Notes: a model not told the origin generated them from the sequence alone. 64,000 bases of DNA from Ranitomeya imitator (GCF_032444005.1 NC_091285.1:38378001-38442000); one strand, 5' to 3'. Counted from the first letter of the stretch, positions 10,571 through 60,539 are shown. Translations and numbers: made by a program.

Positions 10571-10571
10571 A

Positions 10572-19561: not shown

Positions 19562-22500
19562 ATGGGCTTGTGTAGAGTGTGGTTTGGGCTTGTAGTTGCT
19601 CTGTGGGCCTCTGGTCTGGGGTCACCAGTGGGTGCAGTGCAGGACTATTGGGATGAGCCATCACATCTGCAGTGTGGAGCTGATGCCATGGAGTTTTCTC
19701 TCCCTTCCTTGCTTGGGGATGCAGTATTTGCCTTGGCTGTGATTGGTAAGTGCCATAATGTGTGGTAATGTTGCCCATAGAAGTCATGGTGGTTTGTAGG
19801 AAGCTGGGCTGATAGTAATAATCACAATGCAGCATTCACTTTTTTTTGCTCTGTATGTGGTTGCTATGGATGAGACATGAATAAGGGTGTGTGGTGATTT
19901 GTTTTTTGTTTTTTTCTTGGCACATGATGGCTGAGTAAACCAGTGATCATGTGCATGTAACAGCTGATGGGATTGCCAGGTCAGACTGGTTTTGTCCTCT
20001 AGGGACTGATTTCTGCTCTACATAGTAGTGCTGTGTATTGTCATTGGATGATTGCAGCTCTAGATACAGTAAAGATCAAGTTTAAAAAAAAAAAGTTCAA
20101 ATCTCTACCCTTTTGCCTCCTATACATTAAAAAAAAACATGCTTAGTATTGCTGCATCAGATATATAAAATTACCCTAATTGGCATAGCATAAGCTTAAA
20201 ATGTCACAACTGTATGGAGTTTTTTTTTTTCTGCCTCAGTGCAATACTGTTGCAGTAAACCTGTTTACCCCCCCCCCCCCAAAAAAAAAAATGGTTTCAA
20301 CAAAACTGTCAGATCCCAGAAAACTAAGCCATCCCTGCCCCAAATCTCAAGTGAAAATGCTATGTGTGGGTCTCAGAAAAATGGTGACAAAAGCAAAACC
20401 ATATATATATATTTTTTTTAACAGCTTATCCTGTAGAGAAAAGCCCTCTTAGGGTATGTTTCCACGTTCAGGAAACGCTGCTTTTCTGATGCAGCGTTGG
20501 GCTGCAGTGTCCAGATGTTACAGCATAGTGGAGGGGATTTCATGAAATCCCGTCTCCACTATGCATTAAGACGCATACGGCAAAAACGCACATGCGGTGC
20601 GTCTTTTAAGAACGCAGCATGTCCTTACATTGCAGAAACAATGCAGGTGACCTCAGGTGCAGATTTGGTCAGGATTTTACCTGCACAAAATTCTGACCAA
20701 ATCCTGATGCAATCCTGAACGTGTACACATACCCTAACAGCTATATTGGTGAAAAATAAGAGTTGGGTCTTCGAAGGAAGAAATAAAAAAAATCAGCTGT
20801 ACTTGAAAGGGTTAAGCTCTCCATGTAGCTGCTCCTGATACAATGTGTAGTGATTGATATTTCCCTGGCACTGCAGAGCATTGTGTAGTGACTGCAGTGT
20901 GCTCATTGTATAATAAGCGGGACCAGGGAACGAGCAGCTGCAGGGAGAATAACTCTTCCCTTTTCTTCCTGTAGCTGCTGCTTCTGAAGGTGATGGGTTC
21001 CCAGTAAAGCATTTCTCCCTTGTATAATGATCCTTAGAATGGCCTGGACAACAACTTTACACAAATGTGGTGATAAAACTTCGTAGTTGCATGCCAGTAA
21101 TGTCATATATCGCTCGCCTTTCTTATAGACAAGAATGGAAAGTCTCATTACTTTCACAATGACTCCACTTGTGGCACCTGGCTTGGACAGAAATCTGATG
21201 GCTCAATGGCGCTCGGCTCTACATTTCGTGGCTGTTATGTGCGAGAGGAGGTAAGCTGAAAAAGGCAACGGAGAACATTTTGTAGACCGCAGAACCATAA
21301 CTGGATATTGACTTCAGTGAGCTGTTTGCTTCCAGCTCCTCCATAGACCTTTATAAGCAGCAACCGATGACTTATCCACCCAGGACAAGACCTTTTATCA
21401 GTGTTCCCCCAACTCCGGTCCTTGAGCCACCAACAGGTCATGTTTTCAGCATTTCCTTAGTATTGCACAGGTGATGTAATTATCACCTGTTCAATACTAA
21501 AGAAATCCTGAAAACCTGACCTGTTGAGGACCGGAGTTGGGGGACACTGATCTATATGGAAGGACTACCAAATATCTACCTTCCTTTTGCGTAATGAGGC
21601 AATTATTTTACTCTTGTTAATTGCAGAATGACAACTATGTAATGACCATCACTCTAGAAGAGGTTTTCCAGGATGGAAAATCCCAGTATCACAAGAAGGA
21701 CCTGATGTGCCCCATTCTCCTAGGTAAATGTCTATGGTGTTACAGGACTTAAATCCAGTGACTTGTTGCTGCTTTCCTTTATAAATGGGGTTTGTCATGG
21801 TCCAATGGCTATTCAAATGAAGCACAAACGTTTAATATACCCTTGTCATGGCCAAGCAACTCAATGCACCTTCTTGAGGTCTTTCCTCCTATCCACCATA
21901 TCTCTTAAGTAATCCCTGCTAGGAAATGTCCACTCATTCTCTAACTCCCCCAAGGTTAAATACCATGGAAAAGTACTGTACCAAGTCAGCATTTCGTGCA
22001 ACTTCACTTATTGTGCATGGATGACAGATGCTTTGTGCCCCCCAATCCCAGCTTCTTTTTAAAACTTGGACACCAGCGGAAATTTAACAAGCTGTGGCCT
22101 ACCATCGTGACTTTTTACACTTCTGTGTAGGATCTGACGATCCCATTTCCCCCCCCCCAACAAAAAAATGAGCATATGCTCTAGATGGCAGGGCATTGTC
22201 TGCACCACTGTAGTCAGTTGGTGTGCATCACTCTTGGCAGTATAGACCTACTAGTCTTGACTAAATCTTACTGCCCATTTCTTGGGCTTAAGCCATTCTC
22301 CGAGGAACACTATGAACTCAGTCTTGGACTAAAAGGCCAAGTAAATCATTAGTGATCCAGTAACTCTTCTGGCCTTCTCTTCCCTATAGCTATGGATGCT
22401 CCAAGCCCAGGTGACTGTGCTTCAGTTCAGCCAGCCGACCGTCTGCCGTGCGCCAATGACTCCGTCTCTAGAGATCTCTGTGAAGGACTCGGATGCTGCT

Positions 22501-25500
22501 TTTCTCAGTATGAACGGCTGCGCTGCTACTATGGGAAAAAGCGTAAGTTTAACTGCACATAGTCCATTATAATGCTACATCGACATGGTCCTGATATAGC
22601 AAAGCTGAGTTTGACATGACGGCCGTGGTGTCTGGTATATCTTGCATGGGACTGCAGTGTTGCTTAAACAATTAGGTGTTATCAACGTTTCATGTTAAGG
22701 CCATGCTAGAATGCTAATACAGTTGAATGTGGGGTCCAGTGCAGGCACCAGAGCAGCCATGTGGTCTGCTATTGGCAGCACACCACTGGCTGAGGAAGTG
22801 GGGGCTCTAGGCAAATGGCTAGTCTGCCTTGCCCTAATGCTGGGGGAGGGGCCCTACAGTAGACCATTATCAATAGTTTAGCCAACACTCGAATAGGGAG
22901 CCAAACTGGTTGTTGAGGAGTGTCAATCTGGCTTGTGCAAATTTTTGGGCTTCCAAATATGGTGGTGTGCTGGAGATACACCATTGATGGGATTCTCGTA
23001 AGACACAAGCTCACTTAGCTTCGCACATGCCCCCATGGGATCATCCAGTCTTATGATCTCAATGGTTAACTGGCCTTGGGTCTCAAAACAGAATTATGGC
23101 CAATAATAGTACTGTGCTAAGCTTCCAGCTTTTCACATTACTTGTGTAAGTGCCAACCATCTTTCCAGGTATTGATGACTTCATACATATGAAAGGCTAA
23201 AATTCTTGTCTCGCCCATGATTCTTATTTCCATATTAACCACTTGACTTCCTATGCAGTGACTGCTTATTGCAATGCTGAAAACAAGATGGTGGTTGCCA
23301 TTTCAAAAGACCTGACTGTACCGTCCTTAATTTTGGACTCTGTTTACATTATGGATGTGGACTCTGCCTCCTGCCCAGAGCTGAGAGTGGCCACAACTGC
23401 ATCATTCATTGGGTTCCAGTTGCCCCTCTCCTGTGGAGGTGCAAACCAGGTGAGCAAAAAGTTTACTAGAAGTTCATCCGATCAACTGCAAAAAAGTCAA
23501 GCCTGCCTTGCTCTACCTGCAGCAACTGATACTCCTCTATAACTTGGTACCATTTGGTTTTACAGGTGGCCGAGTCATTGGTATATGAACGCACTTTTGT
23601 GGCAACCAACCGTGTACTCACCTGGCAGAGGGCTTCTATCACTAGAGACAGTAACATGAGGTAGTTAAGTACAACTCTAATCTAATGGATAAGATTTTCT
23701 GTAGACTTTTACTAATATAATCTTTAATACAGGGTGACCGTACGCTGCAACTATGGACATACTGGGGTCATACCTCTGCAGGTTGAAGTTTTGACTCTCC
23801 CACCACCTCTTCCTGTGTCCACCTCTGGTCCTCTTCTTTTGGAAATGAGAATAGCCAAAGGTAAGCATTTTCTATTAATACTTAAACCCATGATATGGTG
23901 TCAAACAATTAATACTACAGAACAAGTGGAGTAGTGCACAGAAGTCTTGCAAAAAATGCCACTTGGTTAGCACAAGGCTTGTCCCAGCTGGTTAATGAAT
24001 GCAAGCCTTGGGTCTGTAGACTGTATGAGTTTTGGCTTCATGACAGATGATGGATCTTACGATCTTATTTTAATGAGACGCAATCACCCATCAATGTCTT
24101 GCAGATCAGCAATATACTTCATACTACACTGAACGAGAGTATCCCATCGAACGAGTCTTAAGGGATCCTGTGCACACAGAAGTTCGGATTCTGCAGAGGA
24201 CTGATCCCAGCCTGGTTCTGGTGTTGAACGACTGTTGGGCCACCAATTCTCCTGTGCCTACTGACGGTCCTCAGTGGCCTATCTTGTCTAACAGGTAGGG
24301 GTTAAACAACTAAGGATAAAATCCTTGTCCTGTTGAGGACTTCCATGATGTAATGCATAGTGTTCTCCCTCCTCAGCTGCCCTTTTCAGGGTGACAACTA
24401 TCTGACGGAGCTGGTTCCTGTAGTCTCTTCACAGAGCATGACTTTTCCAACACACTACAAGCGCTTTATCGTTAACGCATTCACCTTTGTGGATGAAAAC
24501 ACCCAAACTGCTCTTTCTGGACTGGTAAGTGTCTTGCTTGTATATGGTCCACTGCCACACTGGTCTGTAAAGGAAATTGCAAATTCTTGCAAGAATCACA
24601 TGACTGGTCTAATTTCACTTTCCTTCCAGCTAAAGGACACCTTATTGAGCAGCTAGAAGTTCACTGACTCTCCTACTTGGGTGACTTGTAAGGGCGGCAG
24701 ACTTCCAGCCACTGTTACAGTAGGGTTGGTGGGTCCCCTTGGCATTGTCTTAGGCATATGGCAAGTAATGGGGGGGGGGGGTGTACCACTTAAAATCTGC
24801 ACCAATTAAGGAGCTTCATACTGGACACAGTGGTGTGCTTAGCTTTTGAGGGTCTGACCTACTATGACTTCAGGGACTCTCTTGCTGATAAGACTTTAAT
24901 CAAGATATAGATACATATATAAAAACCATGTTGTATACATACTACAGGTTATTTGCCCACTCTTGTTTTGATATTGGGCCTTGTCTACTACTCCAGCAGG
25001 AAGTGTCAAATGGGGCTTAAAAAAATCTTCTGCTAAATCCCAAGTCAAACAATCCTCAACATAATTAGAAGAGACTTGCCATGCAGTAGAATATAGTAGG
25101 TCTGAGCTGTAACAAACCTCAGTTGGTAACTTCTCTGTGGTCCTACAGGTGTTCTTTCACTGCAGTGCGTCAGTGTGTGTACCATCTGCCACAGAATCGT
25201 GCTCCATCAACTGTGCCAGAAGACAAAGTAGGTGGAAACTGAGTTACACTCAACTACTGTCTTGGTATTGATGGGCCTCATCTTCTGGAATCTGTTATTT
25301 GATGTTCTGCACATCTTGTGGGCCTAACTTTCAGACTTGTCTTGCAGAAAGAATGGTTGACACATGGGGGTCTGATCTTCAAACAGTGACTTCCAATGGG
25401 CCGATTGTGTTCAACACTAAACTAACAGAAATGGAGAAGTTGCTCCATGAGGAGGAAGGTAAGGAGCTACATACCACGTGATGCAATAGATTAGCCTAAC

Positions 25501-26026
25501 AACTATGTAAAGGGTATTGCCTGACATGTGTATCGGTTAGACATTGGTAACGTGTCAACCTCCCTGTACTCCAACTCGAAAAGACTACCTTCATTGTGAA
25601 GGAACCTAGCAACTTTAGAACTTTAGATGCTAAGGCCCCAACTCATAAAGTTGTCTATGCCAAAAACTTGGCTTTAAATGTCCCAAATATTTGACTTTTT
25701 TTCTCTCAGAGATTAAAACCATTGTATCATGGATATCAGAAGATAGTTGAGGTTGCCAAAGACCAGCCTTGGCTTTAAAAACCAATCCTAGGTCTCAATA
25801 AATTAGGAGACTCTTATTAGTCCAGGTTGCATCATCTATAGGCTGTCTGCTCTCAAATAATCAATGTATAATATTTCCTCTCATAGGCCGTCTTGATTCT
25901 GAAGTTCTCATGGCTTGGCTACAAGCTGGAGCAGCTGCTGTTGGTATACTCCTGTCTGTGTATCTGCTGGGGATTTATCTGTATAAAAGGCACAATAAAT
26001 GTGTTGTGTCCACATTGAATCCTTGA
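19562..26026 (+). CDS. zp4: Zona pellucida glycoprotein 4 (ZPB)-like, copy A; 12 exons, 545 aa
   Basis: Exons 19562-19745, 21129-21250, 21627-21723, 22390-22542, 23259-23449, 23566-23660, 23733-23860, 24105-24294, 24377-24524, 25149-25227, 25348-25458, 25887-26026. All are GT-AG and phase-consistent, totalling 1638 nt with no stops. Domains: signal peptide, 4-Cys ZP-N1 (NDSTCGTW), trefoil (6 Cys, GCCF), ZP-N/ZP-C ([34 protein letters not shown]), furin [17 protein letters not shown]-terminal TM. Confidence 0.93.
20452..20734. mobile_element. Harbinger MITE in ZP4-A intron 1
   Basis: TIRs GGGTATGTTTCCACGTTCAGG and CCTGAACGTGTACACATACCC, with TTA/TAA flanks. Confidence 0.75.
21399..21549. mobile_element. 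hAT-type palindromic MITE in ZP4-A intron 2
   Basis: TIRs CAGTGTTCCCCCAACTCCGGTCCT and AGGACCGGAGTTGGGGGACACTG. The 8-bp flanks do not match (degraded TSD). Confidence 0.7.
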
Positions 26027-30618: not shown

Positions 30619-30857
30619 TTATTATTATTATTATTTATTGTTATAGCGCCATTTATTCCATGGCGCTTTACATGTGAGGAGGGGTATACATAATAAAAAC
30701 AAGTACAATAATCTTAAACAATACAAGTCATAACTGGTACAGGAGGAGTGAGGACCCTGCCCGCGAACGCTCACAATCTACAAGGGATGGGTGAGGATAC
30801 AGTAGGCGAGGATAGAGTTGGTCATGCAGCGGTTTGGTCGATCGGTGGTTGCTGCAG
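30619..30857 (-). mobile_element. 5'-truncated L2 3'-end fragment
   Basis: Reverse complement ends GTAAAGCGCCATGGAATAAATGGCGCTATAACAATAAATAATAATAA, homologous to the L2 tail at 17670-17720. Confidence 0.75.
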
Positions 30858-31180
30858 TTGCGCAAAAATGTAACTTTTAGCATTTGAAGCAGCTAAGGAG
30901 GAGCCGTGGTGGGATAGAGCAGGCCGGAGCGAGCCGTCCCCTCCCCCCCACAGACGGCGTACGTGCAGGCCGTCATGACAGGGGTTTGGAGAGGGAGGAT
31001 AGAAGGGGTGGGAACATGTTTTAGGGGAGGAGGATAGTATGCATTGGGGGGGTTTATAGGGCTAGGTAGGGGGTGGGGTTGGCCAGTTCCCACTCTGGAG
31101 GCCAATAGTGAGTTCCCGCCTGCCCGCCCTGTTTTTACCGTTTTTCTCTTTTGGAGCATTTTTTGCAGCTAAGTTGCTCC

Positions 31181-39087: not shown

Positions 39088-39164
39088 TGATAATAGACAC
39101 CTAGAGGTTCTCCCATCTCTGTCCAATCACAATGGAGCCCTCCCCTCCCCCTCACTATATATAG
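39088..39164 (+). promoter_or_regulatory. ZP4-B proximal promoter
   Basis: TGATAA (39088), CCAATCAC (39123), pyrimidine/GC stretch, TATATATAG (39156-39164). Confidence 0.55.
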
Positions 39165-39207: not shown

Positions 39208-39849
39208 ATGGGTTGGAGTAAGCAGCACCTGGGCCTGGCCATGTTGGTTTGGTGCTGTAGTTTCCAATGTTTAGTCTCTGGCCTCAGTCGGTTTTTGGAT
39301 GAAGTTTCCAGTCTGCAGTGTCGGCCTAGTTCTATGAGGTTTTCTATTCCCACCATACATGAGGAGTTCAATTCTGCTTTGTTCGTGTTGGGTGAGTATA
39401 ATTTATTTTATCCTTTGATTTAGTATTCTTGTAGTATGGGGGTTATTGGTCCTGATTCATCCATGATGTCAAATCACAAAACTCAAGATTATAATTTTAT
39501 GCTAAGAAAGTATACCTCACATATAGACTTTTAGGTTTGCTGTGTATGTAGTGTGTTTTTGTTTTTTTTGTTTTTTTTTTTCTTGGAACCCCAGATGCAA
39601 AATATCAGACTCCCCAAAGAGGCACATCTAGCTTCATCAGGTGCTTACCCTGCATACAGGCTATAGATCTATGTAGGGAAATATATGTAGAGATATATTC
39701 AATTGAGAAGCAGTTATGCCCTATGAGCCTGTATGCAGAGAAAGCCCCTGATGAAGCCAGATGTCACTAAAGCTTTACTCACATTTGGCTTCATCAGGGG
39801 CTTTCTTTACGCAAAGGCTTGTAGAGCAAAACTCCTTCCTAATTGAAAA

Positions 39850-39914
<65 letters not shown>

Positions 39915-42900
39915 CAATTGTATAAGTAGTATTGTGCTGAGCATGTATGTACGGAAAGCGCCTGATGAAGCTAGACGAGCTCTTTATTCACATTTGGCTT
40001 TGTCAGGTGCTTTCTCTACATACAGGCTCGTAGAGCTAAGCTACTTTCCAATTATGTCATCTGTATAATGTGGTGATACTTCACTCTTGAACAGCTATTT
40101 CTCCTTGCAGCTGACCTGCTATATCCTAAATGCTGCAATACCAGATCCAGCCTTTAATCAAGAGGGGCACTGTTTGTAAGCCATGGGGGGTTTTTTGTTC
40201 GTGTGTTTTTTTTTTTTTTGTTTTTTTTTTTGTTTTTTTTTTTCATTGGGTCACCCAGTGGTAGACAGTCTTCACTGTGATATGCACTCATACATAGTGA
40301 AAACTGAACCCAAACTCTGTTTAGACAGCATTTCAAAGGTTTGTTACATTAAAAAAAAAAACAGCTTTTAGCTTCTCTCCCTTGGTCCTATCCATAGTTG
40401 GAAATGCAGAACACTTGATGGATGATTATTAATTCAGTAAAAACTTATGGAAGGATATTACCCATATTACAAGCTTTGATGACCAACATGGAGTAACACC
40501 TAATTATGGAAGTTTGTACTTTGTCTTCCAGATTCTAAAGGAAATCCTCAAGATCTGCGCAATGACTCCACTTGTGGATTGTGGGTAGGACAAAATCTAG
40601 ATTCCTCGGTGATCGTCAATGCTGCTTATGATGGCTGCTACGTCAGAGAAGAGGTGAGACTCGTGCTCATAAGCAGATGCTTGGAGGCATTGACTGGCTG
40701 CATTTTGGTCTGTGGTAACCCACATGACTGACTGCCCTTGCTTCACCATTGATAGGATATCCCCCCAAAATGTCTTGTACTCGCCCCCAAAAAATTAACT
40801 AAAATTAAGTTACAATTGTCATTTTAAAGCCAAATAAGTGTGTATATCCATGCTTTATTAAACGGAAGCATGTAACAACTTTTTGGCAGCTGCAGAAAAT
40901 TTGGGGAATGCTTGTAATCATCTAGACTCCAATGCCCAACTGCTTTGCTGTCCCTTCATATAAACTACCAAGCTATGACCACTCATTCAGTGAGTCGCGT
41001 GTCTAAAATTCAATTCAAATGAGCTTTATTGGCAGGACTAAGTACATGTTAGCATTGCCAAAGCATATGGTAAAAATACAGGGATGGGGGAGGGGGGGGC
41101 ATATAGAGGTCCAGGGTACATCAGACTTCTTTTAGAGGATAGGGGATGTTTCCAGGGTGGGGTATAGGAGTCCATGACATATCAGGCTCTTTAGTCGGGG
41201 GATAGGGATTTGTCCAGTGTTGGGGTACGGGAGTCCATGACATATCAGGCTCCTCTTAGTCTGTGGCAGGCACTGACATATTCCGCTGCTACGGCCACTG
41301 AACTTTCCTCTTCCCCCAGTATTATCGGTAGTTTCTCTTCCTCCTCCATGGAGGTGAAGTCTGGGAGGAGATCAGACACTCTTGAAGTGAGTGTCCCTCA
41401 CTGCGGAGTATTTGGGGCACCTCAGCAGGAAGTGGGCCTCATCCTCCACGGCCTCCTGGGGGCACTGCTGGCAGGGTCTGCTCTCTCGGGGCTTGTAGTT
41501 CAGTCAGTGCCGCCCGGATTCGATGAGTAGGCTGTGGGTGCTCAGTCTGTACCGGCTCAGGATCTGTTGATCTTTGGGGTTTTCTAGTTTCTCTAGCTAT
41601 GGGGTCAGTTTCTACTCCCTCTGTAGATTCTGGTATATTGTCAGTTTCTTAGATTTGTTTGTCGTTCCTCCAGATGCTGAGATAATCCTCTTTGACTTTG
41701 TGTATCATCTTCTGGATTTCACCTTTGTCAGGCCATGGAGGTTGATGGCTTGGTCAGACTGGCTTTGGGTACTTTTTCTTGGGAGGCTTCCTGGTGTAGG
41801 AGGGCTTTGTGATGGTAGGAGCTGGGAATGACAGTGCCTTCTTTATTGCGATGTGTAGTGGGAATCTGCCCTGCTCTGCTCGGCAGGCGCTATTTGATGT
41901 GCTCCGATGGACTTGGAGAAATGCATATAAGTGTGATGTATAAATACTTAAAAACAAGGAACGCACGACTATCTGCCTGTATGATAAACTGAGTGATCTA
42001 CACTTCTAATACTTCTGTAACTCTTGTTTTAGCTCGGAGAACATGTGATGACTCTGATCATGGAACGTATAAATAATGGTGAAGTGGAACATGATAAAAA
42101 GGACCTTAAATGTCCTTCATTGCCAGGTAACTCCATGGTTTCTAGATCCATATCTTATATCGTTCCTGTGGCTTAGAACTCTAGTACTGAGCAGATGACC
42201 TCCAGTTCTCTCATGCTTGAGCCACCTTCAATAATTGGCCCCATAAATGTATTAGTATATAGTACCTATACACCACATGCCACCCTAGTGCTTTTCCTGG
42301 CAGTTGCATGGCCATAAAGAATAGTATGACCACTGAGTGGCGTCCATTATGTGTCCAAATGAGGATTAAGGTGGCTTATGGAAGTGCCTTCTCTTGGTAG
42401 ACAGAAGTCCTCCATTACATGACACATGGACTGAGGTCTACCAAAGCAAAAAAACTACTGGGTCACTACAAAAGTTCTCACCAGGCTCTGAGCCATTGTC
42501 TAAAGTCTTATCTTTAAGACTAACCCTAACTTTTAACGTTGAGTGAAAATCATTCCTTGAACCCCCTATATATGCACAGTAGATATGTGCCACAGTAGTC
42601 AAGACTCCAGATGGCAGCTGAAATTGTGGTTTCCATAAGATTATGAAGATGGATATTTCCTTTGTCTTGAGTGCAAACAAGTGGTCTCATGCTTGGCTCG
42701 GTTGGCAATACCATTCCGGGCACCTTGGTGGTTGTAGTTTTGCAGCAGTTAAAGGTAGATGGTTAATGAGACATCTTTCATAGCTTTGGATGCTCCAAGC
42801 CCTAGTGACTGTGCTGCTATCAAGACGACTGACCGTCTACAGTGTGCAAATTCATCTGTGCCTCAGGATGTCTGTAATCGACTAGGATGCTGCTTTTCTC

Positions 42901-45900
42901 CTGGAGCCTTGCCCCAATGTTATTACGGGAACAAATGTAAGTAATAAGAACTAAAATGTTTCTAGCAAAAAATACTTCTGCATCTGTCCCTAAATTGTTG
43001 TAAAGTTGCTAATTTCTAATAAAGGGGTGCAACACCACACAACCTGTGGGGTTTTTTTTTTTTTGACAAACTTCTAAACTCAATCAGTATACAGTGTGTT
43101 CATTTGCACCTTCCAAAATTCATTCCTGGTCTCTTCGTTTACTCCTGTTCCAGTCACTGCCCTATGTACTGATGATGGTCAAGTTCTGATCGTACTTTCT
43201 AAAGAGCTGACTGCACCATCATTGATCTTTGAATCTGCCTTTGTCCATGGTGTGGATTCCTCATCCTGTCCGTCACTGAGAACTTCTAAGAATTCAGCTT
43301 TTCTAGTGTTTCAGTTTCCCCTCTCATGTGGTGGAGGAAGTCGGGTAAGTCTACTGTGAAGTCATCAAATGAATTTCCAAATTCCTAGGTTGGGTCTTGG
43401 CAATTTGACACCAACAGCATAAACTTTAGAAGTCTGTAGCCACTCAACAGTTGGCATATCTTCAACTAGACATGGATGTCACGACTTCTACATTATTTAT
43501 CCATTGGCAGGTCTTGGGTAACTCCATTGTATATGAGAATACAGTGGAAGCCACTAGGGATGTTAGGATATGGAAAGGCTCATCCATCACAAGAGACAGT
43601 ACGATGAGGTAAGATCAAATCTGTAACCTTGACATGAAGATATTTAACTTATGCCATGAAATTGTTGTTGGGACCGGGTCCTGTTCTCGTTGCCATTTTA
43701 ATAGGGGTGTTTAAAATCCCCAGAGTTGTGATATCACTCCGAACAAAAAAATGGGAGACTGAGTCTAGTGTAGGGAAGCGCCTGAAAAGCACAACATGCA
43801 TGGGTGGGTTTTTTTTTTTTTTTTTTTGGTAGGTGCACAAAATAACTTACAATATCTACCTCCTAGGCTGACAGTTCGATGTAGTTATTCCCAGACTGGC
43901 AACCTTCCATTACATGTTGAGGTGCTTACTCTGCCACCACCACTTCCAGTATCCACTACGGGACCTCTGCTGCTGGAGATGAGAATAGCTAAAGGTAACA
44001 AGTGGTCAAAGTGATGTCTAGTATAAAGGTGTGAGGGTCTACTAAAAATGAAGCCAGGCTTCACCTGTCAGTTTCACTTCTTCTGGTCCCTGGCGGTCTA
44101 ATTCCATGTCAAAACTTCATGTACGATTCCTGGCATCAAAGATGCTTGCATGGCACGAGACTACTCAGGCTAGTAGTTGGGCGTAGTAGCCATGTGTAAC
44201 TTATCTTTACTGCCATCTAATAAAGAACCACTAAAGTGGTGGTACTTGAGCAGCATGGGTTTTGGGTAGACGAGTAAGATGTTCTCTAGAAGAGCCATTA
44301 AAGTATGACAAATACTACCATAGTGCTTCACATTGGAGCTTGCCAATGATGTTGTACTTATTAATTGGTGGAGAAAAGTTCAACTTGATGAACCAAGTAG
44401 CATGTCCATCTCCTATAAGACTACTACTCGTTAATCTCTTGGTAGCATGTATAAAACTGACCCATCATGGTTCTACATCTTGCATTTGCTATATTAACTC
44501 TTGGCCTTCTGATCAAATCTTATCTTGTAGATGATGCATATGCAGTATACTTCATGGACAATGAGTATCCAGTAACTAAATTTCTAAGAGATCCAGTTTT
44601 CTTGGAAGTCCGCATTCTGAGAAGAACAGATCCAAGCCTGGTCCTAATGTTGGATGACTGCTGGGCCACGTCTACTTCAGATCCCACACAAGAAGTCCAG
44701 TGGCCTATACTTGTAGATGGGTAAATCTTAAAATATAACTTCTAGGAGGGAGCAAAAGCTTAATTTTGTATAAAGGGTAACTGAAAGTTTATTTCAGATG
44801 CCCCTTTCCTGGAGATAACTACAGGACGAAGCAATACTCGGTTGAAACTCCCTCACAGAGATTGCAGTACCCAACACACTACCAACGTTTCATTGTCAAC
44901 ACCTTCACATTTCTGGATGCAAATGACCAACCTTCAACTGGTGGACTGGTGAATGTCTTTAGCCTTTACTGTAGTAGATGGAATAGAGGTAGTAATATTA
45001 GGAAATGTACTGAAAGACCTAAATGCCCAAAATGACAGCAATGTGGGGGAGCTTGGAGGGGAATGTCAAAACATGGGTGTAAAACTTAGTATGTCCATAA
45101 CATGCATTGGACCTAAACAAATGCCATGATTATGGTCTTAATTGCCTTTTCTACTATGCATCCCAGGTGTACTTCCACTGCAGTGCCGCAGTTTGTGTAG
45201 CAGATGGGACACAATCTTGTAGAACCTCATGCCCACAAAGAAAAAGTAAGGGTTTTACTTTTAGGACTTCTAATTATTGACTGGCCAAGCATAACTGTTT
45301 TCAATGTTGTCTAACTGCAGGACGAGACATTGAGGAAAGTGGTGAGAAGATCACAGTGAGCAAAGGTCCAGTTCACTTCATTGACCCTAAAATGCCATCA
45401 CAGACAAAGGGTGACATGTCTACTAGCATGCAAGGTATGTTGCCCCTTACCGGTTCATCTGGTAGATGTCCTGATGGAGAAACATGGGTGTTGCCTAAAC
45501 CACCCACTTCTGTGTTCGGTTGAGCAAAGGGTTCTAGAATGCTACTTTTTTTTTTTTTTTTTTTTTTGGGACTTTGTCTACCAGCAGGAGACATCTGGGA
45601 CTATGATACACAGAATGAAACGGCTGTACCAGATTTCATAGGTGCTGAAAAGGAAGATCATGTGGATGGGGACTTAATTGAAATAACCAAGAATTTCCCC
45701 AGAAGAGTCAAAGGTAATGATGGCAACACATGGACTTACTTTCTGACTTTGGGCTGTCCATTTATTTACTTATTTATTTTTCCAGACTTTGAATCGGATG
45801 ACTCCACCCTGGTGTGGCTCAAAGCGGTGGCTGTAGGAGGAGGGATCTTTACTTTAACGATGGCAGTACTTGGTGTCTGGCGGTGCCAAAAAAGTCAGAG

Positions 45901-45928
45901 GCCCACAATGTATTCTGTAAAAATATGA
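39208..45928 (+). CDS. zp4: Zona pellucida glycoprotein 4 (ZPB)-like, copy B; 12 core exons (548 aa) plus a candidate extra exon (591 aa)
   Basis: Exons 39208-39391, 40532-40653, 42033-42126, 42784-42936, 43154-43344, 43511-43608, 43867-43994, 44531-44720, 44798-44948, 45167-45245, 45321-45434, [45585-45713], 45786-45928. All are GT-AG with the same phases as copy A and no stops. Trefoil, ZP module, furin RKRR, EHP TVSKGPVHF and TM are all present. Confidence 0.92.
41006..41925 (-). mobile_element. Degenerate 3' fragment of a CR1/L2-group LINE in ZP4-B intron 2
   Basis: Minus-strand translation gives LQVHRSTSNSACRAEQGRFPL and RYRLSTHSLLIESGRH*...CQQCPQEAVEDEAHFLLRCPKY (C-terminal zinc-knuckle), followed by a TTTGAA/ATTGA-type tail. 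Confidence 0.75.
45585..45713 (+). CDS. Candidate extra symmetric exon of ZP4-B (43 codons)
   Basis: T-rich tract, tandem CAG-CAG acceptor and AAG|GTAATG donor. The exon is 129 nt, phase 1/1, with no stop, and encodes AGDIWDYDTQNETAVPDFIGAEKEDHVDGDLIEITKNFPRRVK. Confidence 0.6.
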
Positions 45929-52060: not shown

Positions 52061-52063
52061 TAA

Positions 52064-52620: not shown

Positions 52621-52694
52621 TGTGGCGGTACTCTCTCAGAATGCAAATAACAGAAAACAAATGTATTCAAGGAGGTGTCGATCCGACAGGCTCA

Positions 52695-54072: not shown

Positions 54073-54125
<53 letters not shown>

Positions 54126-54496
54126 CCTACACTATATGTAGACATTTATTTTATCTGTTCTATTCTAACCCGTCAGTGTGATTTTACTGTACACCGCACT
54201 GAATTACCGGCTTTTCTCTCTAACACCGCTGCGTATATTTCTCTCAAGTCACACTGCTGGTCCGTGTGTAATCCGTATTTTTCTCGCCCCCATAGACTTT
54301 CATTGGCTTATTTTTTGCGCAATACGGTGACAAACGCAGCATGCTGCGATTTTCTATGGCCGTAGAAGACCGTATAATACGGATCAGTAAAATACGGCTG
54401 ATAGGAGCTGGGGCATAGAGAAGCATTGTACCGTATGCAATCCGTATTTTCTGCACCTCTCATACGTCCATAACACTCGCCAGTGTGAGGCCGGCC
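52695..54496 (+). mobile_element. Complete 1.8-kb Harbinger non-autonomous element with about 170-bp internal hairpin arms
   Basis: TIRs GGCCGGCCTCACACT and AGTGTGAGGCCGGCC with TCA TSD (52692-52694, 54497-54499). Inverted arms about 52960-53130 and 53140-53305. Ends 183 bp upstream of the ZP4-C TATA. Confidence 0.88.
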
Positions 54497-54624
54497 TCAG
54501 AATTTCAAATGCTGTTGCAAAAAAAAATGCTGTCTATAATGAGGGAGTGAGAACAGCATCCTGATCCTTCCCACCACTTACACCATCATTGGACACATAT
54601 TGGATTTGCATAGCCTACTGGGCA

Positions 54625-54685
54625 CAGGTGTCCACATTAGTAGCTGACCAATCACGTGTTCCTTCCCCCGCTCCATGATATAAAT
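54625..54685 (+). promoter_or_regulatory. ZP4-C proximal promoter
   Basis: E-box CAGGTG (54625), CCAAT (54648) abutting E-box CACGTG (54653), TATAAAT (54679-54685). Confidence 0.65.
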
Positions 54686-54728
54686 GCTTGGTCTTGGGTG
54701 TAGGTTAGTAATCAACATCACAGAGAAG

Positions 54729-57700
54729 ATGGGGTGTCGGATGGCAGGGGTGGGCATTGTGCTGGTGTTCTGGATATGGTGTGTTTGCTGTAGTGATGCA
54801 AAGAATTTATGGGATTCCTCTTCACATCTCCATTGTGGTGTTGAAAGCATGGAGTTGTCCTTCCCTCTATTGATTGAGGATATTGCATTTTCATTGACTG
54901 TTCTAGGTAAGTCTAAGTGAGTTTTCGGCGTGCATTTGATTCTCTTATTAGGTTTTGCTTTTTTTTTATCTAAAGTAGAGGTGCTGATGTAAAGTTATGG
55001 GGAAAATTGTGTGTTTATGACTTGGGTTTTAAAACTTTGTTTTTTTGGAGGGGGAACTGGCCTCAGCTAGTTGTGAGGTTTTTATTTACCAATCCTTTTT
55101 ATCTTTTTTGCACCAAATGTGTCTTTACGTTGTGCTCACGCTAAGGCTATGTGCACACGTTCAGGATTTCTCGCAGAGAATTCCTGAGAAAAACCTGACA
55201 TTTTCTGCAAGAAATCCGCATGCGTTTTTTTTTTTTTTTTTCCTTTCTCCCCCCCCCCCCCCCCACGGACATTTCCCAATGTATTTTGTAGTGGGGAATC
55301 CGCAACACTAATGAACATGCTGTGTTTTTTACCGCGATGCGTTTTTTTTCTCACGGGAAAAAAATGCATCATGTGCACAAAACATGTGGAATTCATTCTA
55401 AGTGATGGGATGCTTACTGTATGTGGTTTTTATCGGGGGGGGGGGGGGGGCGAGGGAAACAGCAACGTGTGCACACAGCCTAAGTATTTGGAGCAGAAAC
55501 TTCAACTCTGTACTCGTTTGGTTTTTGGAAAGTTCTCACTCTGAAAACTGACCACTCCCTTAGGGTAACTGCTTTAAAAGCTGTGTGGGGTTTTATATAA
55601 ATTTTTTTTTTTTTTTTTCCCCCCCACCCTTCCTTTTTCTGCAAACTCGATTTTGGTGCACAGGGGCCAGGCTGTGCACTGGGTCTTCTCCTCCTCCATG
55701 ACTGCTCTTCCACAGCCCCTCTGTCTGTACAACTATTGTACTACTTTTTACTGCCCTGCCTCAAAGACTAAGGCAGGGAGCAGACCCGATACACTGAAAT
55801 ATGTAAGTGGTAAAAAAAAATCCAAATAAAATCTGAAATTGTAATTAAGCATCCAAGTGGATTTCTTCCCTAAAGCCGTGTCTTTACACTATATTCATGC
55901 TGGCGACTTCCTTTTTGGAAGGGGCATCCCCACAGTAGCTCTGGAGGAGAAGGCAAAAACTCAGTATCTGCCCTGTAGAACAGATGGGCAAAGTGAAGAA
56001 ACTGCTAGTCGGTGGAGCAGCAGCAACTTGGGAAGACGCCCAGTGATGGGTTGTCTGACTCTGATCAGTGCTCGTATAAACTTTTTTTTTTTTTTTTTTT
56101 TTATGCAGTTCACAAATGGGGACTAAAGTTAAGATTCCTATATGCTATTGTATATGAAGACACAAAAGCGCACGGAGGTAAAAAAAAAATACACTGTTGT
56201 GAAAAAATAACAGTAAATAAGCAAGTGCTAGTCAAAAAAATAAAATACAGGGTATTTAGTTAATACGTTTTTTTGCAAAAAATTATTAACTAAATACACT
56301 TTTTTTTTTTTTCATTTTTTTTGACTAGCACTTGCTTATTTACTGTTACTTTTTTACAACAGTTTTTTTTTTTTTTTTTTTTTTCTTTAACCTCTGTGCG
56401 CTTTTGTCTTCAAGTTCTTTGGTGTGAACAGGTTTCTACAGACTTGTTCACTGTGCAAGTAGCCCATGTGTTTTTGGTTTTATGCTATTGTGTATATGTA
56501 TAATCAATCAGCAAGAACTGCTTCTTTCTCCACTTATGAGCCGCTTCATACTCTCCCACCGGGAAAAAAAAAGCTTAATTTTATCTTGCTCAGGACTAGC
56601 GTACCAGTTCACTATTGTATTAAACTTTATGGTGGTAGGAACCGTGTACCATATGTAAGAGTTTTGTGAAGCAGGGAATATGTGCAGGCTCAAGCTAGCA
56701 TATCCCAGAGCTGGACTCGCATCTACACTGCATAACTTAATGCATGACTGTTAGTATACAGATGATAAGCAAAGTGAGAGCAGGAATCCTTCATTCTGTG
56801 TCTATGGAAGACATCATGATGTATAGTTACTACTTGTTTCTACTTGTGTTGCAGGGTGTGAACTTTCTCTAAATCCTTGCTTGGTAACAAATTCTGAACT
56901 TCTTTTAAATTGTCTTAGACTTTCAGGGAGAGCCTCATGTCCTTGGCAATAACTCGGCTTGTGGGTTCTGGATAAGCAAGAAACTAAATGGCATAATGCT
57001 GGTTAGTGCTGCTTATGACGGATGCTACATGATTGAGGAGGTAAGAACTGGATGGAGAACTGACAACAAAAAACTATTATATTGAAATGACTAATTTCAG
57101 TGCTCCCATAACTGTTTTTTCACATGGTTGATGTAGGTGAACCCAAAGGCCCCTCTGCCACATAAGACACCATAAATGAGTGGGTTACCAGATTTTGCTT
57201 TGGTTTTCACCCCCATGTCCCATAACTGTTGGCTTGCAGGGCAACTCCTTAAGACTTTTGGGTGTGGTGAAAAGAAGGAAAAAACAAACTGGTGCTCCTG
57301 AAGCTCTTAACTAAAATTATTAATCTGTTATGCTGTGCACACCCAGGAAAACTGGTCAGCGCAAAATAAGTAGCCACTTGTCTCCATCTATTAGTTTTCT
57401 GGGAGTTTGGAAGTTGCTATAATGCTTCTGCAGACAAGTCTAACAACTGATCAGGGATCTAATCTGCTGTCAATATATCTTGGCAGGACAAAGAATATGT
57501 GATGACTCTAATCTTGGAAGAGATCGTAAATGGACAAGTTGAGCAATATAAGGTGGAAAAGAGATGTCCTGTTATAGCAGGTAAACCACTCTAAAAAATT
57601 CTTCTTTTTTTACATACGTTCACTTTTGTTGCACATTTTACTCCACTCATTAGTATGGATGAGTTCTGAAGCAGAAACACCTGAAACTGTGCTACAGATT

Positions 57701-60539
57701 TAAATCTGCAAGCTAAAAAACAAAACAAAAAAAATTCAGGACTCTCATTCATTTTTCTGGTACTAAACGATCCTTCAGGTTTACTGACAAAACTATACAA
57801 TGTGTGCAGACTCTGAGGGTATGTGTCCACCTTCAGGATGGCCGGCGGTTTAGTCGGAGCGGCAAACGTGCTCCGCCCCCTTCTGGGACACGATTATGCC
57901 AGATGTGTTCATAGTACACATCCGGGATCATCGCACCCAACACATAGGGCCCTGTGTTATACCTTGCGTATACGGACATGCTGCGATCTTAAAAGACGCG
58001 CCGCATGTCCGGAGACGCAGGGACGCCGTGTGCGTGTTACCACGCATAGTGGAGACGGGACTTCATTCAATCCCCTCCACTATGCTGTAACATCTGGACT
58101 CTGCGTGTTTGGCGAAGCGTCAAGCACGCAGCGTTTACTACATGTGGGGTACTTGCCTATCTTCCATGAGGGGTATTTCCTCTACCTAAACTAGATCTGG
58201 TGTTCTACGCCTCAAGTCCAAAAGGACAGCCCTTTCTAAGGTAACCTCCTTGGTACCGGGTTACACTTATTTCTCTCTTCCATCCTAGTTATGGATGCTC
58301 CAAGCGCAAGTGAATGTTCAGCAGTGAGTCAAGCAGACAAGCTTTCTTGTGTGAAGGCCCCAGTGTCTCGAGAAGTTTGCGAGGAAGTTGGGTGCTGTTT
58401 CTCAAATGACTTTACAGTTCCATGTTACTATGGAAAGAAATGTAAGTACGGTATCTCGACCACAAAAATCCTGTTGACAAATTTTACTGTTTTATTCTAA
58501 CATTATGGAGGAATGACACTCAGGCTTTCCTGACCATTCAATAGAGGATGGTATAACTTGCCTTCCTTCGGTTGTCATGATGTTTCATGACTTTCTTGCA
58601 GTGACCACACAGTGCACAAGTGACAATCTCATGACAGTTGCTGTTTCCAAAGATCTTACAAAGCCATCACTGAACTTGTCTTCAGTCCATGTGGTTGGTT
58701 TGGACTCTTCGTCTTGCGCTCGTCTGTCAGTGTCCATGAGTGCATCATTTGCCGTTTTCCAGTTCCCTTTATCCTGTGTTGGATTTCATCAGGTAAGGAC
58801 AAGTAGATGGGAAGGTGCACACAAATATTTGGCCACACCAAGGGTGCACCAAGTGCCTGGACACTCCTTTTAAAGGATACTGAGACCAGATTTGTTTTGC
58901 TATCTTGAGTAGGGGAATGTATAGAAGTGTTAAACATAAGTCTAGACGTTGGGTGCCTTAAGGTAATATGGCTGTGCTGCAATGTCTCAACCTGTAGACA
59001 AGTGCTGCAGCAATGGTAAGAGCAGTCAGCCATGTATCTACAAATCTTCACAAATTATTTGGCTGACCCTATAACATTTCCTATAGGCCTCAGATATAAA
59101 TTACTTCACAGCATCAAACTAGACCCGGTATGATGTAACTACTAAATATCTAATGTAGGTAGTTGAAGGACCGCTGGTCTATGAGAGCACTATTGAAGCT
59201 GTAAGAAATACCATCTCCTGGCAAGGATCCACAATTACAAGGGACAGCACGATGCGGTAAGGAGTCAAACTTGTCAGACTAAACTTGATTTCTGTCCTGA
59301 TTTATAACAATGTTGTCATATTTCCAGGGTGACTGTACGATGCAGCTATTTCCAAACTGACCTTATTCCTTTGCAAGTTGGAGTATCCACTCTACCACCA
59401 CCACTTCCCGTTACTACCTCGGGGCCACTGTTAATGGAGATGAGGATTGCACAAGGTGACTTCATGGAATGACTTCAAATTGCAAAAAAAAAATGGCTAA
59501 ACCTAGTTTCTTAAAATATCTCTGTTCTATTCGCAGATATGTCCTACTCCTCTTACTTCCTGGAGGAGCATTACCCTGTGGTTAAAGTACTCAGAGATCC
59601 AGTCTACTTGGAAGTCCGCCTCTTGCATAGAACCGATCCCAATCTTGTCCTAGTGTTAAACGACTGCTGGGCCACTAACTCTGCAGACTCCACGCTCCTT
59701 CCTCAATGGCCTATCCTATTGAATAGGTGGCTGATCAGTTACAAATTAAATGCCCACTATGGGTTTATGCATCTGACTAACGTAAGTCTACTTACAGATG
59801 CCCCTTCGATGGTGACAACTACATTTCCCAGAGTGTACCTGTTGGAGGTCCTACGCAAAGCCTGCCTTTCCCAAATCACTATAAACGTTTTGTAGTGAAG
59901 ACCTTTACATTTGTGGATCAAGGGGCCCAAACTGCTCTTGAAGGATTGGTAAATATACTTCAAATTCATCACTTTTCTATGCAAAACCTGATCTTGTATT
60001 GGCCATCAAGCTCTGTTATCTCCACTCCAGATCTACTTCCACTGTAGTGCTTCTGTCTGTGTCCCATCTGCCATGGACAACTGTGTGACTTCATGTTCCT
60101 CAAGAAAGAGTAAGCTTGCTTCATCTAAACATAAGCTCTTGCCACCTTGTAACGTCGTCTTCTACACTAAATGTACATAGAAATAATGCTGAGACTTCTT
60201 TTCTAGGACGTATGGCTGAAGATGTTGAACCAGAACCTTTAGCAAACGTGGTGACTTCAGATGGACCAGTTGAGTTCCTCCCAATTGAGACTGAGGCCTT
60301 AAATCTAAAAGGTAATTGTACAATGTATGGGTTGATCATGAGAATCTTGTGATTAAATACCGGTAAATATAATTATTTTTTTGTTCTCCTCTTCAGGTCA
60401 CACTTACTCTAAATATTCAAAGTTGGATGTTGTCCGAGCTGTTACTGTTGGAGGAGTAGTTATGTCAGTGTTTGTGGTGTTTTTAGGTGTTTGGTTTCAT
60501 TGTAGGACACAAAGTAAGAAACACGAACTAAATGCTTAA
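54729..60539 (+). CDS. zp4: Zona pellucida glycoprotein 4 (ZPB)-like, copy C; 12 exons, 543 aa
   Basis: Exons 54729-54906, 56919-57040, 57487-57580, 58289-58441, 58602-58792, 59159-59256, 59328-59455, 59537-59726, 59798-59948, 60031-60109, 60207-60311, 60397-60539. All are GT-AG with the same phases, totalling 1632 nt with no stops. Trefoil, ZP module, furin RKRR, EHP VTSDGPVEF and TM are all present. Confidence 0.92.
55145..55480. mobile_element. Harbinger MITE in ZP4-C intron 1
   Basis: TIRs GGCTATGTGCACACGTT and AACGTGTGCACACAGCC with TAA TSD on both sides. Confidence 0.82.
56156..56411. repeat. AT-rich fold-back (about 255 bp), probably a MITE core, in ZP4-C intron 1
   Basis: GAAGACACAAAAGCGCAC...AACAGTAAATAAGCAAGTGCTAGTCAAAAAA is mirrored by TTTTTTGACTAGCACTTGCTTATTTACTGTT...GTGCGCTTTTGTCTTC. 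Confidence 0.8.
57817..58157. mobile_element. Degenerate Harbinger-type MITE in ZP4-C intron 3
   Basis: Left TIR GGGTATGTGTCCAC resembles the 20452 family. The right end is degraded. Confidence 0.5.

What the first reader, a model, noticed from the sequence alone, without database searches (positions are those of the whole stretch)
19562..60539. Three intact, deeply diverged ZP4/ZPB egg-coat genes in a tandem array
Seen: three same-strand genes with an identical 12-exon phase pattern, open reading frames (545/548/543 aa), all ZP-N1, trefoil and ZP-module cysteines, furin site, EHP and TM, and each with its own TATA promoter. I see no intron similarity and no shared TE insertions, so the duplications look old. 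Known: ZP4 is a single-copy gene in the mammals that retain it and builds egg-coat filaments as a partner of ZP3. Inference: a retained triplet points to a diversified vitelline-envelope subunit system (different ZP3 partners, oocyte stages, or sperm-recognition surfaces). I cannot tell from this window whether this is already described in this lineage.
Basis: partly seen in the sequence, partly recalled or inferred. Interest (0 to 1): 0.85.

Follow-up and report, generated by a model that had tools for sequence, protein, structure and literature searches.

The report
Three old frog ZP4 egg-coat genes
The window (mimic poison frog, Ranitomeya imitator) really does hold three intact, same-strand ZP4-type egg-coat genes, but they are an ancient triplet shared one-to-one by all sampled "modern" frogs (Neobatrachia) and are already in public annotation, so this is a sound but ordinary finding.

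Summary
Three + strand genes (19562-26026, 39208-45928, 54729-60539) each encode a complete ZP4/ZPB-type precursor: signal peptide, ZP-N1, trefoil, type-II ZP module, furin site, EHP and TM. All three share 20 cysteines and the same intron phases. Each has a TATA box 50-52 bp before the ATG.

- Gene 2 has 13 exons and 591 aa, not 12 exons and 548 aa. The extra exon is conserved in its orthologues.
- A ~1-kb repeat family lies upstream of genes 2 and 3.

The window is Ranitomeya imitator. Gene 1 equals RefSeq XP_069618386.1 and gene 2 equals CAJ0967329.1.

Phylogeny puts the copies in three strongly supported clades (A, B, C). Each clade holds myobatrachid, ranoid and hyloid frogs, so the triplication is at least as old as their common ancestor. 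Xenopus zp4 is about 51% identical to all three. dN/dS against Mixophyes orthologues is 0.19-0.30 for every copy.

The genes are old, constrained and almost certainly functional type-II subunits that co-polymerise with ZP3. Subfunctionalisation is plausible but untested, because no expression or proteomic data were available here. Novelty is low: "ZP4-like" arrays are annotated in many frog genomes. I found no paper that describes the neobatrachian A/B/C structure.

The parts
19562..26026 (+). Gene 1 (clade A ZP4-like), 12 exons, 545 aa
   Evidence: Exons: 19562-19745, 21129-21250, 21627-21723, 22390-22542, 23259-23449, 23566-23660, 23733-23860, 24105-24294, 24377-24524, 25149-25227, 25348-25458, 25887-26026. 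The translation is identical to R. imitator RefSeq XP_069618386.1 (P0286). It is 69% identical to Rhinella arenarum ZPB.
39208..45928 (+). Gene 2 (clade B ZP4-like), 13 exons, 591 aa
   Evidence: Exons: 39208-39391, 40532-40653, 42033-42126, 42784-42936, 43154-43344, 43511-43608, 43867-43994, 44531-44720, 44798-44948, 45167-45245, 45321-45434, 45585-45713, 45786-45928. The translation is identical to CAJ0967329.1 (P0169).
45585..45713 (+). Clade-B-specific extra exon (exon 12 of gene 2). It encodes 43 aa of the C-terminal propeptide between EHP and TM.
   Evidence: Both flanking introns are phase 1, so skipping the exon stays in frame. The peptide, with a conserved N-E-T sequon and a DG.LI motif, is present in hyloid, myobatrachid and ranoid clade-B proteins.
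54729..60539 (+). Gene 3 (clade C ZP4-like), 12 exons, 543 aa
   Evidence: Exons: 54729-54906, 56919-57040, 57487-57580, 58289-58441, 58602-58792, 59159-59256, 59328-59455, 59537-59726, 59798-59948, 60031-60109, 60207-60311, 60397-60539. It is 96.9% identical to R. variabilis XP_077117403.1 and 91.7% identical to the D. tinctorius orthologue.
19512..19518 (+). TATA box of gene 1 (TATAAAA, -50 from the ATG). E-boxes lie at -180, -107 and -14.
   Evidence: This is a motif-level match only.
39156..39163 (+). TATA-like box of gene 2 (TATATATA, -52 from the ATG). A CCAAT box lies at -85.
54679..54685 (+). TATA box of gene 3 (TATAAAT, -50 from the ATG). A CCAAT box lies at -81 and E-boxes at -104 and -76.
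25149..25458 (+). Gene 1 exons 10-11. The consensus furin cleavage site RQKR is assembled across the phase-1 intron and is followed by the EHP ([10 protein letters not shown]). The equivalents are 45167-45434 in g2 and 60031-60311 in g3.
   Evidence: The R-x-[KR]-R site and the EHP are conserved in all 57 neobatrachian sequences aligned.

Best explanation
The region is the ZP4 (ZPB) gene cluster of the poison frog Ranitomeya imitator. It holds three paralogues, called A, B and C here. They arose by two duplications on the lineage leading to Neobatrachia and have been kept as separate genes under purifying selection ever since.

Each gene encodes a type-II egg-coat precursor. By inference from the family, the pathway is as follows. 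The signal peptide directs secretion and the C-terminal TM anchors the precursor. Furin-type cleavage at R-x-K/R-R removes the EHP-TM propeptide. The ZP-N and ZP-C halves of the ZP module then polymerise head-to-tail into a type-II protofilament that pairs with a ZP3 protofilament. ZP-N1 and the trefoil domain project from the filament.

Three separately constrained paralogues most likely mean that the neobatrachian vitelline envelope contains three non-redundant ZP4-type subunits, that is, subfunctionalisation in amount, timing, place or surface properties.

Shown here: gene structures, domain content, orthology, age and selective constraint. Inferred: oocyte expression, incorporation into the envelope, and any division of labour.
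For: - Domains.
- Fold: matches to fish ZP1 trefoil+ZP-N (8bqu_C, TMt 0.76), fish ZP1 ZP-C (8bqu_B, 0.63) and chicken ZP1-N1 (6gf6/6gf7, about 0.7).
- Gene models: identical to annotated R. imitator proteins.
- Clades: A, B and C each have 100 support and each contains three neobatrachian superfamilies. A tree holding all neobatrachian copies together is 5.2 lnL units better than the free tree (p-AU 0.60).
- Xenopus: all three copies are about 51% identical to zp4.
- Selection: dN/dS against Mixophyes orthologues is 0.25 (A), 0.26-0.30 (B) and 0.19 (C).
- Motifs: 20 Cys, the furin site and the EHP are conserved.
- Synteny: B->C tandem on the same strand in Dendrobates tinctorius. The A...B...C order is kept in Mixophyes between a VEGFR-like gene and an amino-acid-permease gene.
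- Filament mechanism and interchangeability of type-II subunits: bioRxiv 10.1101/2023.06.21.544075.
Against: - No expression or proteomic evidence was available for any copy.
- g3 has only a 280-aa partial model in the R. imitator GenBank annotation.
- dS against Mixophyes is about 0.85-1.27, close to saturation, so the omega values are approximate.
- The position of clade B relative to non-neobatrachian ZP4 is unresolved (support 84-88). The first duplication could therefore be older, with later loss elsewhere.
- Heleophrynidae and Sooglossidae were not sampled.
- The AF2 model of the ZP-C half is of low confidence.
- Published filament models suggest type-II subunits are interchangeable, which argues against strict functional partition.
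Confidence: 0.85

Rival explanations
1. The triplet is a recent, dendrobatid- or hyloid-specific expansion and so a lineage novelty.
For: Lineage-specific extra copies do exist in other frogs. Dendropsophus and Hyla have duplicated clade-A genes, Mixophyes has extra B copies, and Rana and Mantella have extra C copies.
Against: Each window gene groups with orthologues from Myobatrachidae and Ranoidea, not with its neighbours in the window. Paralogues are only 47-50% identical, with saturated dS. Introns are unalignable.
Confidence: 0.02
2. One or two copies are non-functional or unexpressed relics that merely keep open reading frames.
For: No expression data were available here. g3 is only partially annotated in the R. 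imitator GenBank record, and its annotated start lies in a repeat. Clade B is the fastest-evolving copy, with 93.9% identity between R. imitator and R. variabilis against 97.8% (A) and 96.9% (C). It also has the least conserved ZP-N1.
Against: All exons, splice sites and 20 Cys are intact. The furin site and EHP are retained in every species. dN/dS is 0.19-0.30 for each copy. Intact orthologues of each copy persist in 16-21 sequences per clade.
Confidence: 0.05
3. The array mixes ZP1 and ZP4 orthologues. In that case one copy would be the frog cross-linker ZP1 rather than a ZP4 paralogue.
For: ZP1 and ZP4 share the same architecture. Feng et al. 2018 reported a small Xenopus clade that groups with ZP1 (PMC6262864).
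Against: With fish and lungfish outgroups, bird, mammal, turtle and Pleurodeles ZP1 form a separate clade (99). All three window genes sit on the ZP4 side with amniote ZP4. The three are equally distant (about 37%) from ZP1. ZP-N1 carries only the four canonical Cys and there is no long ZP1-type spacer.
Confidence: 0.03
4. One paralogue has left the egg coat and acquired another role or site of expression, for example liver, oviduct or another epithelium. Precedents are teleost choriogenins and notothenioid ZPs.
For: ZP paralogues have shifted tissue or function in fishes (abstracts of PMC10140178 and PMC5059455). Clade B has a conserved extra propeptide exon of unknown role.
Against: All polymerisation determinants are conserved in all three copies. 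The promoters share TATA spacing, and g1 and g3 carry E-boxes near -105 of the kind used by oocyte ZP genes (the link to oocyte expression is from general knowledge).
Confidence: 0.05

Closest known systems
Xenopus zp4 (gp37/ZPB; X. tropicalis NP precursor P0178, X. laevis zp4.L P0180)
   Same: Same architecture: ZP-N1, trefoil, type-II ZP module, furin site, EHP and TM. Same family clade in the trees. It is a major vitelline-envelope subunit alongside ZP3 (PMC8904931).
   Different: In this protein set Xenopus contributed only zp4. It is about equally distant from all three window genes (50-53% identity) and lies outside clades A, B and C.
Rhinella (Bufo) arenarum ZPB, UniProt Q27HF5
   Same: Clade-A orthologue of gene 1, with 69% identity.
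   Different: It represents only one of the three paralogues. Bufo B and C orthologues exist only as genome predictions (P0203, P0267).
Mammalian ZP4
   Same: Domain order and 20-Cys pattern. It sits on the ZP4 side of the ZP1/ZP4 split.
   Different: About 37-43% identity. Mammalian ZP4 is single-copy (general knowledge). The frog cluster in Mixophyes is flanked by VEGFR-like and amino-acid-permease genes. Synteny with mammalian ZP4 was not tested.
Tandem ZP1/4 expansions in teleosts (six tandem zebrafish copies, Feng et al. 2018 PMC6262864; catfish amplification PMC13704971)
   Same: Tandem amplification of the same subfamily of egg-coat genes.
   Different: The fish arrays are described as species- or lineage-specific recent repeats that cluster together in trees. 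The frog triplet is ancient, with 1:1:1 orthology across superfamilies.
Fish ZP1/choriogenin H in the solved ZP3/ZP1 filament (PDB 8BQU/8RKI)
   Same: Best solved-structure relatives by sequence (E 6e-37) and by fold (TMt 0.63-0.78). They provide the polymerisation model.
   Different: 42% identity in ZP-C and 28% in trefoil+ZP-N. The fish protein is made in the liver in many teleosts.

Membership tests
ZP4/ZPB (ZP1/4 subfamily of type-II egg-coat subunits) | N-terminal free ZP-N1 (ZP1_ZP4 Ig-like) domain with 4 Cys | tested here: met
   PF22821 hit at E 8.5e-12 on g1 exon 2. The same domain is precomputed for P0169, P0181 and P0221. Four aligned Cys are present in all three copies. The fold matches chicken ZP1-N1 (6gf6/6gf7, TMt about 0.7).
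ZP4/ZPB (ZP1/4 subfamily of type-II egg-coat subunits) | Trefoil (P-type) domain with 6 Cys immediately before the ZP module | tested here: met
   PF00088 hit at E 1.1e-9. Six Cys are conserved in g1-g3. 8bqu_C (trefoil+ZP-N) matches with TMt 0.76.
ZP4/ZPB (ZP1/4 subfamily of type-II egg-coat subunits) | Type-II ZP module (ZP-N plus ZP-C, 10 conserved Cys) | tested here: met
   PF23344 and PF00100 hits. Ten Cys columns are shared and are at least 91% conserved in each clade. Sequence hits to ZP2 ZP-C (5BUP) and choriogenin H (8BQU).
ZP4/ZPB (ZP1/4 subfamily of type-II egg-coat subunits) | Precursor processing elements: signal peptide, consensus furin site, EHP and C-terminal TM | tested here: met
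   RQKR, RKRR and RKRR are formed at the exon 10/11 junction, followed by a ..TS.GP..F EHP. Helices at 3-23 and 551-580 in the AF2 model of the g2 product. Actual cleavage was not tested.
ZP4/ZPB (ZP1/4 subfamily of type-II egg-coat subunits) | Phylogenetic placement with ZP4 rather than ZP1, ZP2 or ZPAX | tested here: met
   The ZP1 clade is separate (99). The window genes lie within the amphibian plus amniote ZP4 group (support 94, 99).
ZP4/ZPB (ZP1/4 subfamily of type-II egg-coat subunits) | Oocyte expression and incorporation into the vitelline envelope with ZP3 | not testable with these tools
   No RNA-seq or proteomic resource was available and no paper was found.
ZP1 (egg-coat cross-linker) | Orthology with amniote or salamander ZP1 | tested here: not met
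   All three copies fall outside the ZP1 clade and are about 37% identical to ZP1.
Neobatrachian ZP4 clades A, B and C (defined here) | Each window gene nests in a clade that holds Myobatrachidae, Ranoidea and Hyloidea orthologues | tested here: met
   SH-like / SH-aLRT support is 100 for each clade in FastTree (121 rows) and in IQ-TREE PMSF (77 rows).
Neobatrachian ZP4 clades A, B and C (defined here) | Conserved clustering and order on one chromosome | tested here: inconclusive
   Dendrobates has B->C on the same strand. Mixophyes has the order A, B, B-like, C within about 95 kb, but the B copies are inverted and further B copies lie 220 kb away. Hyla sarda, R. variabilis and D. tinctorius records gave no DNA or coordinates.

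The most novel reading that the evidence does not exclude
The three paralogues are obligate, non-interchangeable type-II subunits of the neobatrachian vitelline envelope. Under this reading each would supply a different layer, oocyte stage, ZP3 partner or sperm-facing ZP-N1/trefoil surface. The conserved clade-B propeptide exon would control when or where that subunit is released for polymerisation. That would make modern frogs a natural system with a three-ZP4 egg coat, a structure not described in the literature I could search.
Probability: 0.25. Interest if true: 0.5.

Novelty: already known. Interest (0 to 1): 0.27.

Why it matters
For genome annotation it matters little. The genes are ordinary members of a well-known family and are already predicted in this species and many others.

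For egg-coat biology there is a modest point. Nearly all frog egg-envelope biochemistry comes from Xenopus, which in this protein set contributed only one gene of this lineage (zp4). The sampled Neobatrachia carry three ancient ZP4 paralogues, each under its own constraint.

If all three are built into the envelope, models of anuran envelope composition, sperm binding and hardening based on Xenopus gp37 would not transfer directly to toads, tree frogs, ranids or poison frogs. The A/B/C framework also gives a clean orthology scheme for naming the many "ZP4-like" predictions.

Tried and rejected
- Spliced proteins could not be passed by reference. I therefore used one ZP-C exon for the representative search and then fetched full-length relatives.
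- The look-up of encoding contigs returned no DNA or coordinates for R. imitator, R. variabilis, D. tinctorius and Hyla sarda because the files were too large. It found no record for P0212 and P0173. As a result, close-species dN/dS and hyloid gene order could not be computed, and only Mixophyes DNA was usable.
- I looked for the Mixophyes flanking genes (VEGFR-like and amino-acid permease) in the window. Only TE matches appeared.
- I looked for extra ZP exons or pseudogene fragments in the window and found none.
- I considered whether the shared 2.4-kb upstream block of g2 and g3 is a remnant of the duplication unit. I rejected this. It is 82-85% identical while the conserved exons are only 72-75% identical, it is built of ~1-kb units with inverted repeats, and a third, inverted copy exists.
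- Strict clade-specific signature sites were few, 8 columns in all, so they give no strong case for functional divergence.
- The AF2 model of the g2 product was confident only for the N-terminal half. I used it only for fold matching.
- Literature searches for a described neobatrachian ZP4 triplet or for expression data found nothing relevant.


Full report
**What is in the sequence**

The window has 43% G+C and one 141-base N run at 6383-6523, which I left untouched. A six-frame self-comparison showed nine or more collinear blocks of paralogous coding sequence on the + strand, in three places: about 19.5-26 kb, 39-46 kb and 54.7-60.5 kb.

Pfam assigns the gene-1 exon pieces to four domains in the order expected for ZP1/ZP4-type proteins:
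- ZP1_ZP4_Ig-like, that is ZP-N1 (E 8.5e-12)
- Trefoil (E 1.1e-9)
- ZP-N
- ZP-C (E 7.6e-17)

One ZP-C exon alone finds fish choriogenin H (8BQU) and mouse ZP2 ZP-C (5BUP) among solved structures.

**Gene models**

I modelled splice junctions using amphibian relatives found with one exon. I enumerated GT/AG pairs that keep the frame and scored them against those relatives.

Every junction has a strong canonical site. The intron phases are the same in all three genes: 1,0,1,1,0,2,1,2,0,1,1. Exon lengths are nearly the same, for example 122, 153, 191, 128, 190 and 79 nt in all three.

- Gene 1 (19562-26026) gives 545 aa.
- Gene 3 (54729-60539) gives 543 aa.
- The furin site is assembled across the phase-1 intron between exons 10 and 11: RQKR, RKRR and RKRR. 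An EHP of the form ..TS.GP..F follows, then a C-terminal hydrophobic helix.

It has an additional 129-nt exon (45585-45713) between the EHP exon and the TM exon. The 13-exon product of 591 aa is identical, residue for residue, to GenBank CAJ0967329.1 of Ranitomeya imitator.

The exon is not an annotation accident. Its peptide, with a conserved N-E-T sequon, is present in clade-B proteins of hyloids, myobatrachids and ranoids.

Twenty Cys columns are shared by the three proteins: 4 in ZP-N1, 6 in the trefoil and 10 in the ZP module.

Each ATG is preceded by a TATA-type heptamer at -50, -52 and -50. Outside TA microsatellites such heptamers occur roughly once per kb per strand in this window. 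The common position is therefore unlikely to be chance. This is motif evidence only.

No other ZP-like fragments occur in the window.

**Origin of the window**

The gene-1 translation equals R. imitator RefSeq XP_069618386.1, and gene 2 equals CAJ0967329.1. CAJ0967328, CAJ0967329 and CAJ0967330 are consecutive entries on one 819-kb contig. That contig shows gene 2 with the next ZP gene downstream on the same strand.

Gene 3 is represented in that annotation only by a 280-aa partial, whose first exon lies in the repeat upstream. R. variabilis RefSeq has a 544-aa orthologue that is 96.9% identical.

**Age and orthology**

A profile search returned 577 relatives. Many frog species have three to seven proteins named "zona pellucida sperm-binding protein 4-like" on one chromosome.

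I built two trees:
- FastTree, 121 sequences
- IQ-TREE with a site-heterogeneous model, 77 sequences

In both, each window gene sits in its own clade with support of 100.
- Clade A holds g1 and includes the cloned Rhinella arenarum ZPB.
- Clade B holds g2.
- Clade C holds g3.

Each clade contains Myobatrachidae (Mixophyes, Pseudophryne), Ranoidea (Rana, Nanorana, Mantella, Pyxicephalus, Hyperolius) and Hyloidea. Pipids (including Xenopus zp4), Ascaphus, Bombina and pelobatoids fall outside the three clades.

The free IQ-TREE topology puts clade B outside (non-neobatrachians + A + C), with weak support (84-88). However, a tree that holds all neobatrachian copies together is 5.2 log-likelihood units better (p-AU 0.60). 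The simplest reading is two duplications on the neobatrachian stem. An older origin of B with later loss elsewhere is not excluded.

All three window proteins are 50-53% identical to Xenopus zp4 and 47-50% identical to each other. With fish and lungfish outgroups, ZP1 forms a separate clade and the frog genes lie on the ZP4 side.

A further, older anuran "ZP4-like" clade exists; most of its members are listed on contigs of other lengths than that species' A/B/C genes. It is not in this window.

**Constraint**

Only Mixophyes fleayi DNA could be fetched. I mapped its three proteins exactly onto the loci and computed pairwise dN/dS against the window orthologues.

| Clade | dN/dS | dS |
|---|---|---|
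| A | 0.25 | about 1.04-1.08 |
| B | 0.26-0.30 | about 0.85-0.98 |
| C | 0.19 | about 1.22-1.27 |

The dS values are high, so the ratios are approximate. Even so, none is near 1.

The 20 Cys, the furin site and the EHP are kept in 57 neobatrachian sequences. Clade B evolves fastest. R. imitator and R. variabilis are 93.9% identical in B, against 97.8% in A and 96.9% in C. B also has the least conserved ZP-N1.

**Arrangement elsewhere**

- In Dendrobates tinctorius a 591-aa B gene ends 4.9 kb upstream of the C gene on the same strand, as in this window.
- In Mixophyes the order is VEGFR-like gene, A, B (inverted), a B-like gene (inverted), C, amino-acid permease, all within about 95 kb. Further B copies lie 220 kb away.

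The cluster and the order A, B, C are therefore conserved, but orientation and copy number vary. Neither flanking gene is inside the window.

**Introns and spacers**

Introns do not align between the paralogues. The only exception is a 130-bp repeat fragment lying in different introns of g1 and g3, in inverted orientation. This supports old duplications.

The spacers are mostly transposable elements:
- an intact 1075-aa LINE ORF2 at 14197-17424
- another LINE ORF that starts 59 bp after the g2 stop codon
- Tc1/mariner remnants at 9015-11206
- a ~1-kb repeat family just upstream of both g2 and g3

That last repeat is more similar between copies (82-85%) than the best-conserved exons (72-75%), and it has a third, inverted copy. 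It is therefore a later insertion family, not a relic of the duplication.

**How the genes most likely work**

By sequence and by fold the products match the type-II subunit of the solved fish ZP3/ZP1 filament. In that work ZP1, ZP2 and ZP4 are proposed to co-assemble head-to-tail in one protofilament that pairs with a ZP3 protofilament. The trefoil domain protrudes from the filament, and type-II subunits appear interchangeable, their incorporation depending on expression and location (bioRxiv 10.1101/2023.06.21.544075).

In Xenopus and in salamanders ZP4 and ZP3 are the major envelope components (PMC8904931).

The inference is that the three frog proteins are secreted, cleaved at the furin site and built into the vitelline envelope with ZP3. 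Their long separate conservation points to non-redundant roles. What those roles are cannot be told from sequence.

**Novelty**

The genes are already predicted in this species and in many other frogs, and tandem ZP1/4 amplification is known in fishes (PMC6262864; PMC13704971). I found no paper that describes the neobatrachian A/B/C triplication. Feng et al. 2018 analysed only Xenopus among frogs.

The orthology framework is a small addition.

Noticed in passing
window 14197-17424 (+): An uninterrupted 1075-aa LINE ORF2 with endonuclease and reverse-transcriptase domains, in a strongly C-over-G skewed block. It may be a young, intact element.
   Followed up: partly
window 45987-48482 (+): An 831-aa LINE ORF2 fragment starts 59 bp after the stop codon of gene 2, in the same orientation. 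AATAAA signals at +39 and +97 lie between them. A turtle 'ZP4' model (P0018) carries a LINE-like tail that matches this ORF, which suggests annotation read-through in other genomes.
   Followed up: partly
window 9015-10208 (-) and 10589-11206 (+): Two Tc1/mariner transposase remnants (HTH_Tnp_Tc3_2 plus DDE_3) in opposite orientations.
   Followed up: partly
window 4412-8108: A 20-bp satellite of about 77 copies (6560-8108) abuts the N run at 6383-6523. 11-bp arrays lie at 4412-4696 and 5311-5958. The long 'ORFs' here are artefacts of the repeats.
   Followed up: partly
window 30200-34500 (+): A G/T-skewed block of frame-shifted ORFs with weak hits to a tyrosine recombinase (E 2e-4) and a GDSL-type hydrolase (E 1e-3). 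It has internal direct repeats at 30916-31180 / 33785-34055 (94%) and about 33323-33758 / 34058-34493 (about 96%). It could be a decayed DIRS/Ngaro-like retroelement; that attribution is from memory and unresolved.
   Followed up: partly
window 35858-38218, 52946-54497, 50948-51860: A ~1-kb repeat unit with internal inverted repeats. Two tandem units end about 1 kb upstream of gene 2. One copy ends 232 bp upstream of gene 3. A third copy is inverted. Copies are 82-85% identical. The R. imitator GenBank model of gene 3 seems to start inside it.
   Followed up: partly
window 45585-45713 (+): The clade-B-specific extra exon encodes a conserved stretch (N-E-T sequon, DG.LI motif) of the C-terminal propeptide. 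That propeptide should be removed at the furin site, so the reason for its conservation is unexplained.
   Followed up: partly
L001-L003 (Mixophyes fleayi CM076006.1, 313.36-313.71 Mb): The ZP4 cluster lies between a short VEGFR-like (Ig-domain) gene and an amino-acid-permease gene. The same 392-aa VEGFR-like neighbour lies beside a clade-A gene in Hyla sarda. Mixophyes has several B-type copies, two of them inverted.
   Followed up: partly
proteins P0094, P0242, P0188, P0185, P0069, P0256, P0030, P0270: A separate, older anuran 'ZP4-like' clade branches before the caecilian + salamander + frog ZP4 group. Most of its members are listed on contigs of other lengths than that species' A/B/C genes. 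Its relation to the ZP1-like Xenopus clade of Feng et al. 2018 was not examined.
   Followed up: no
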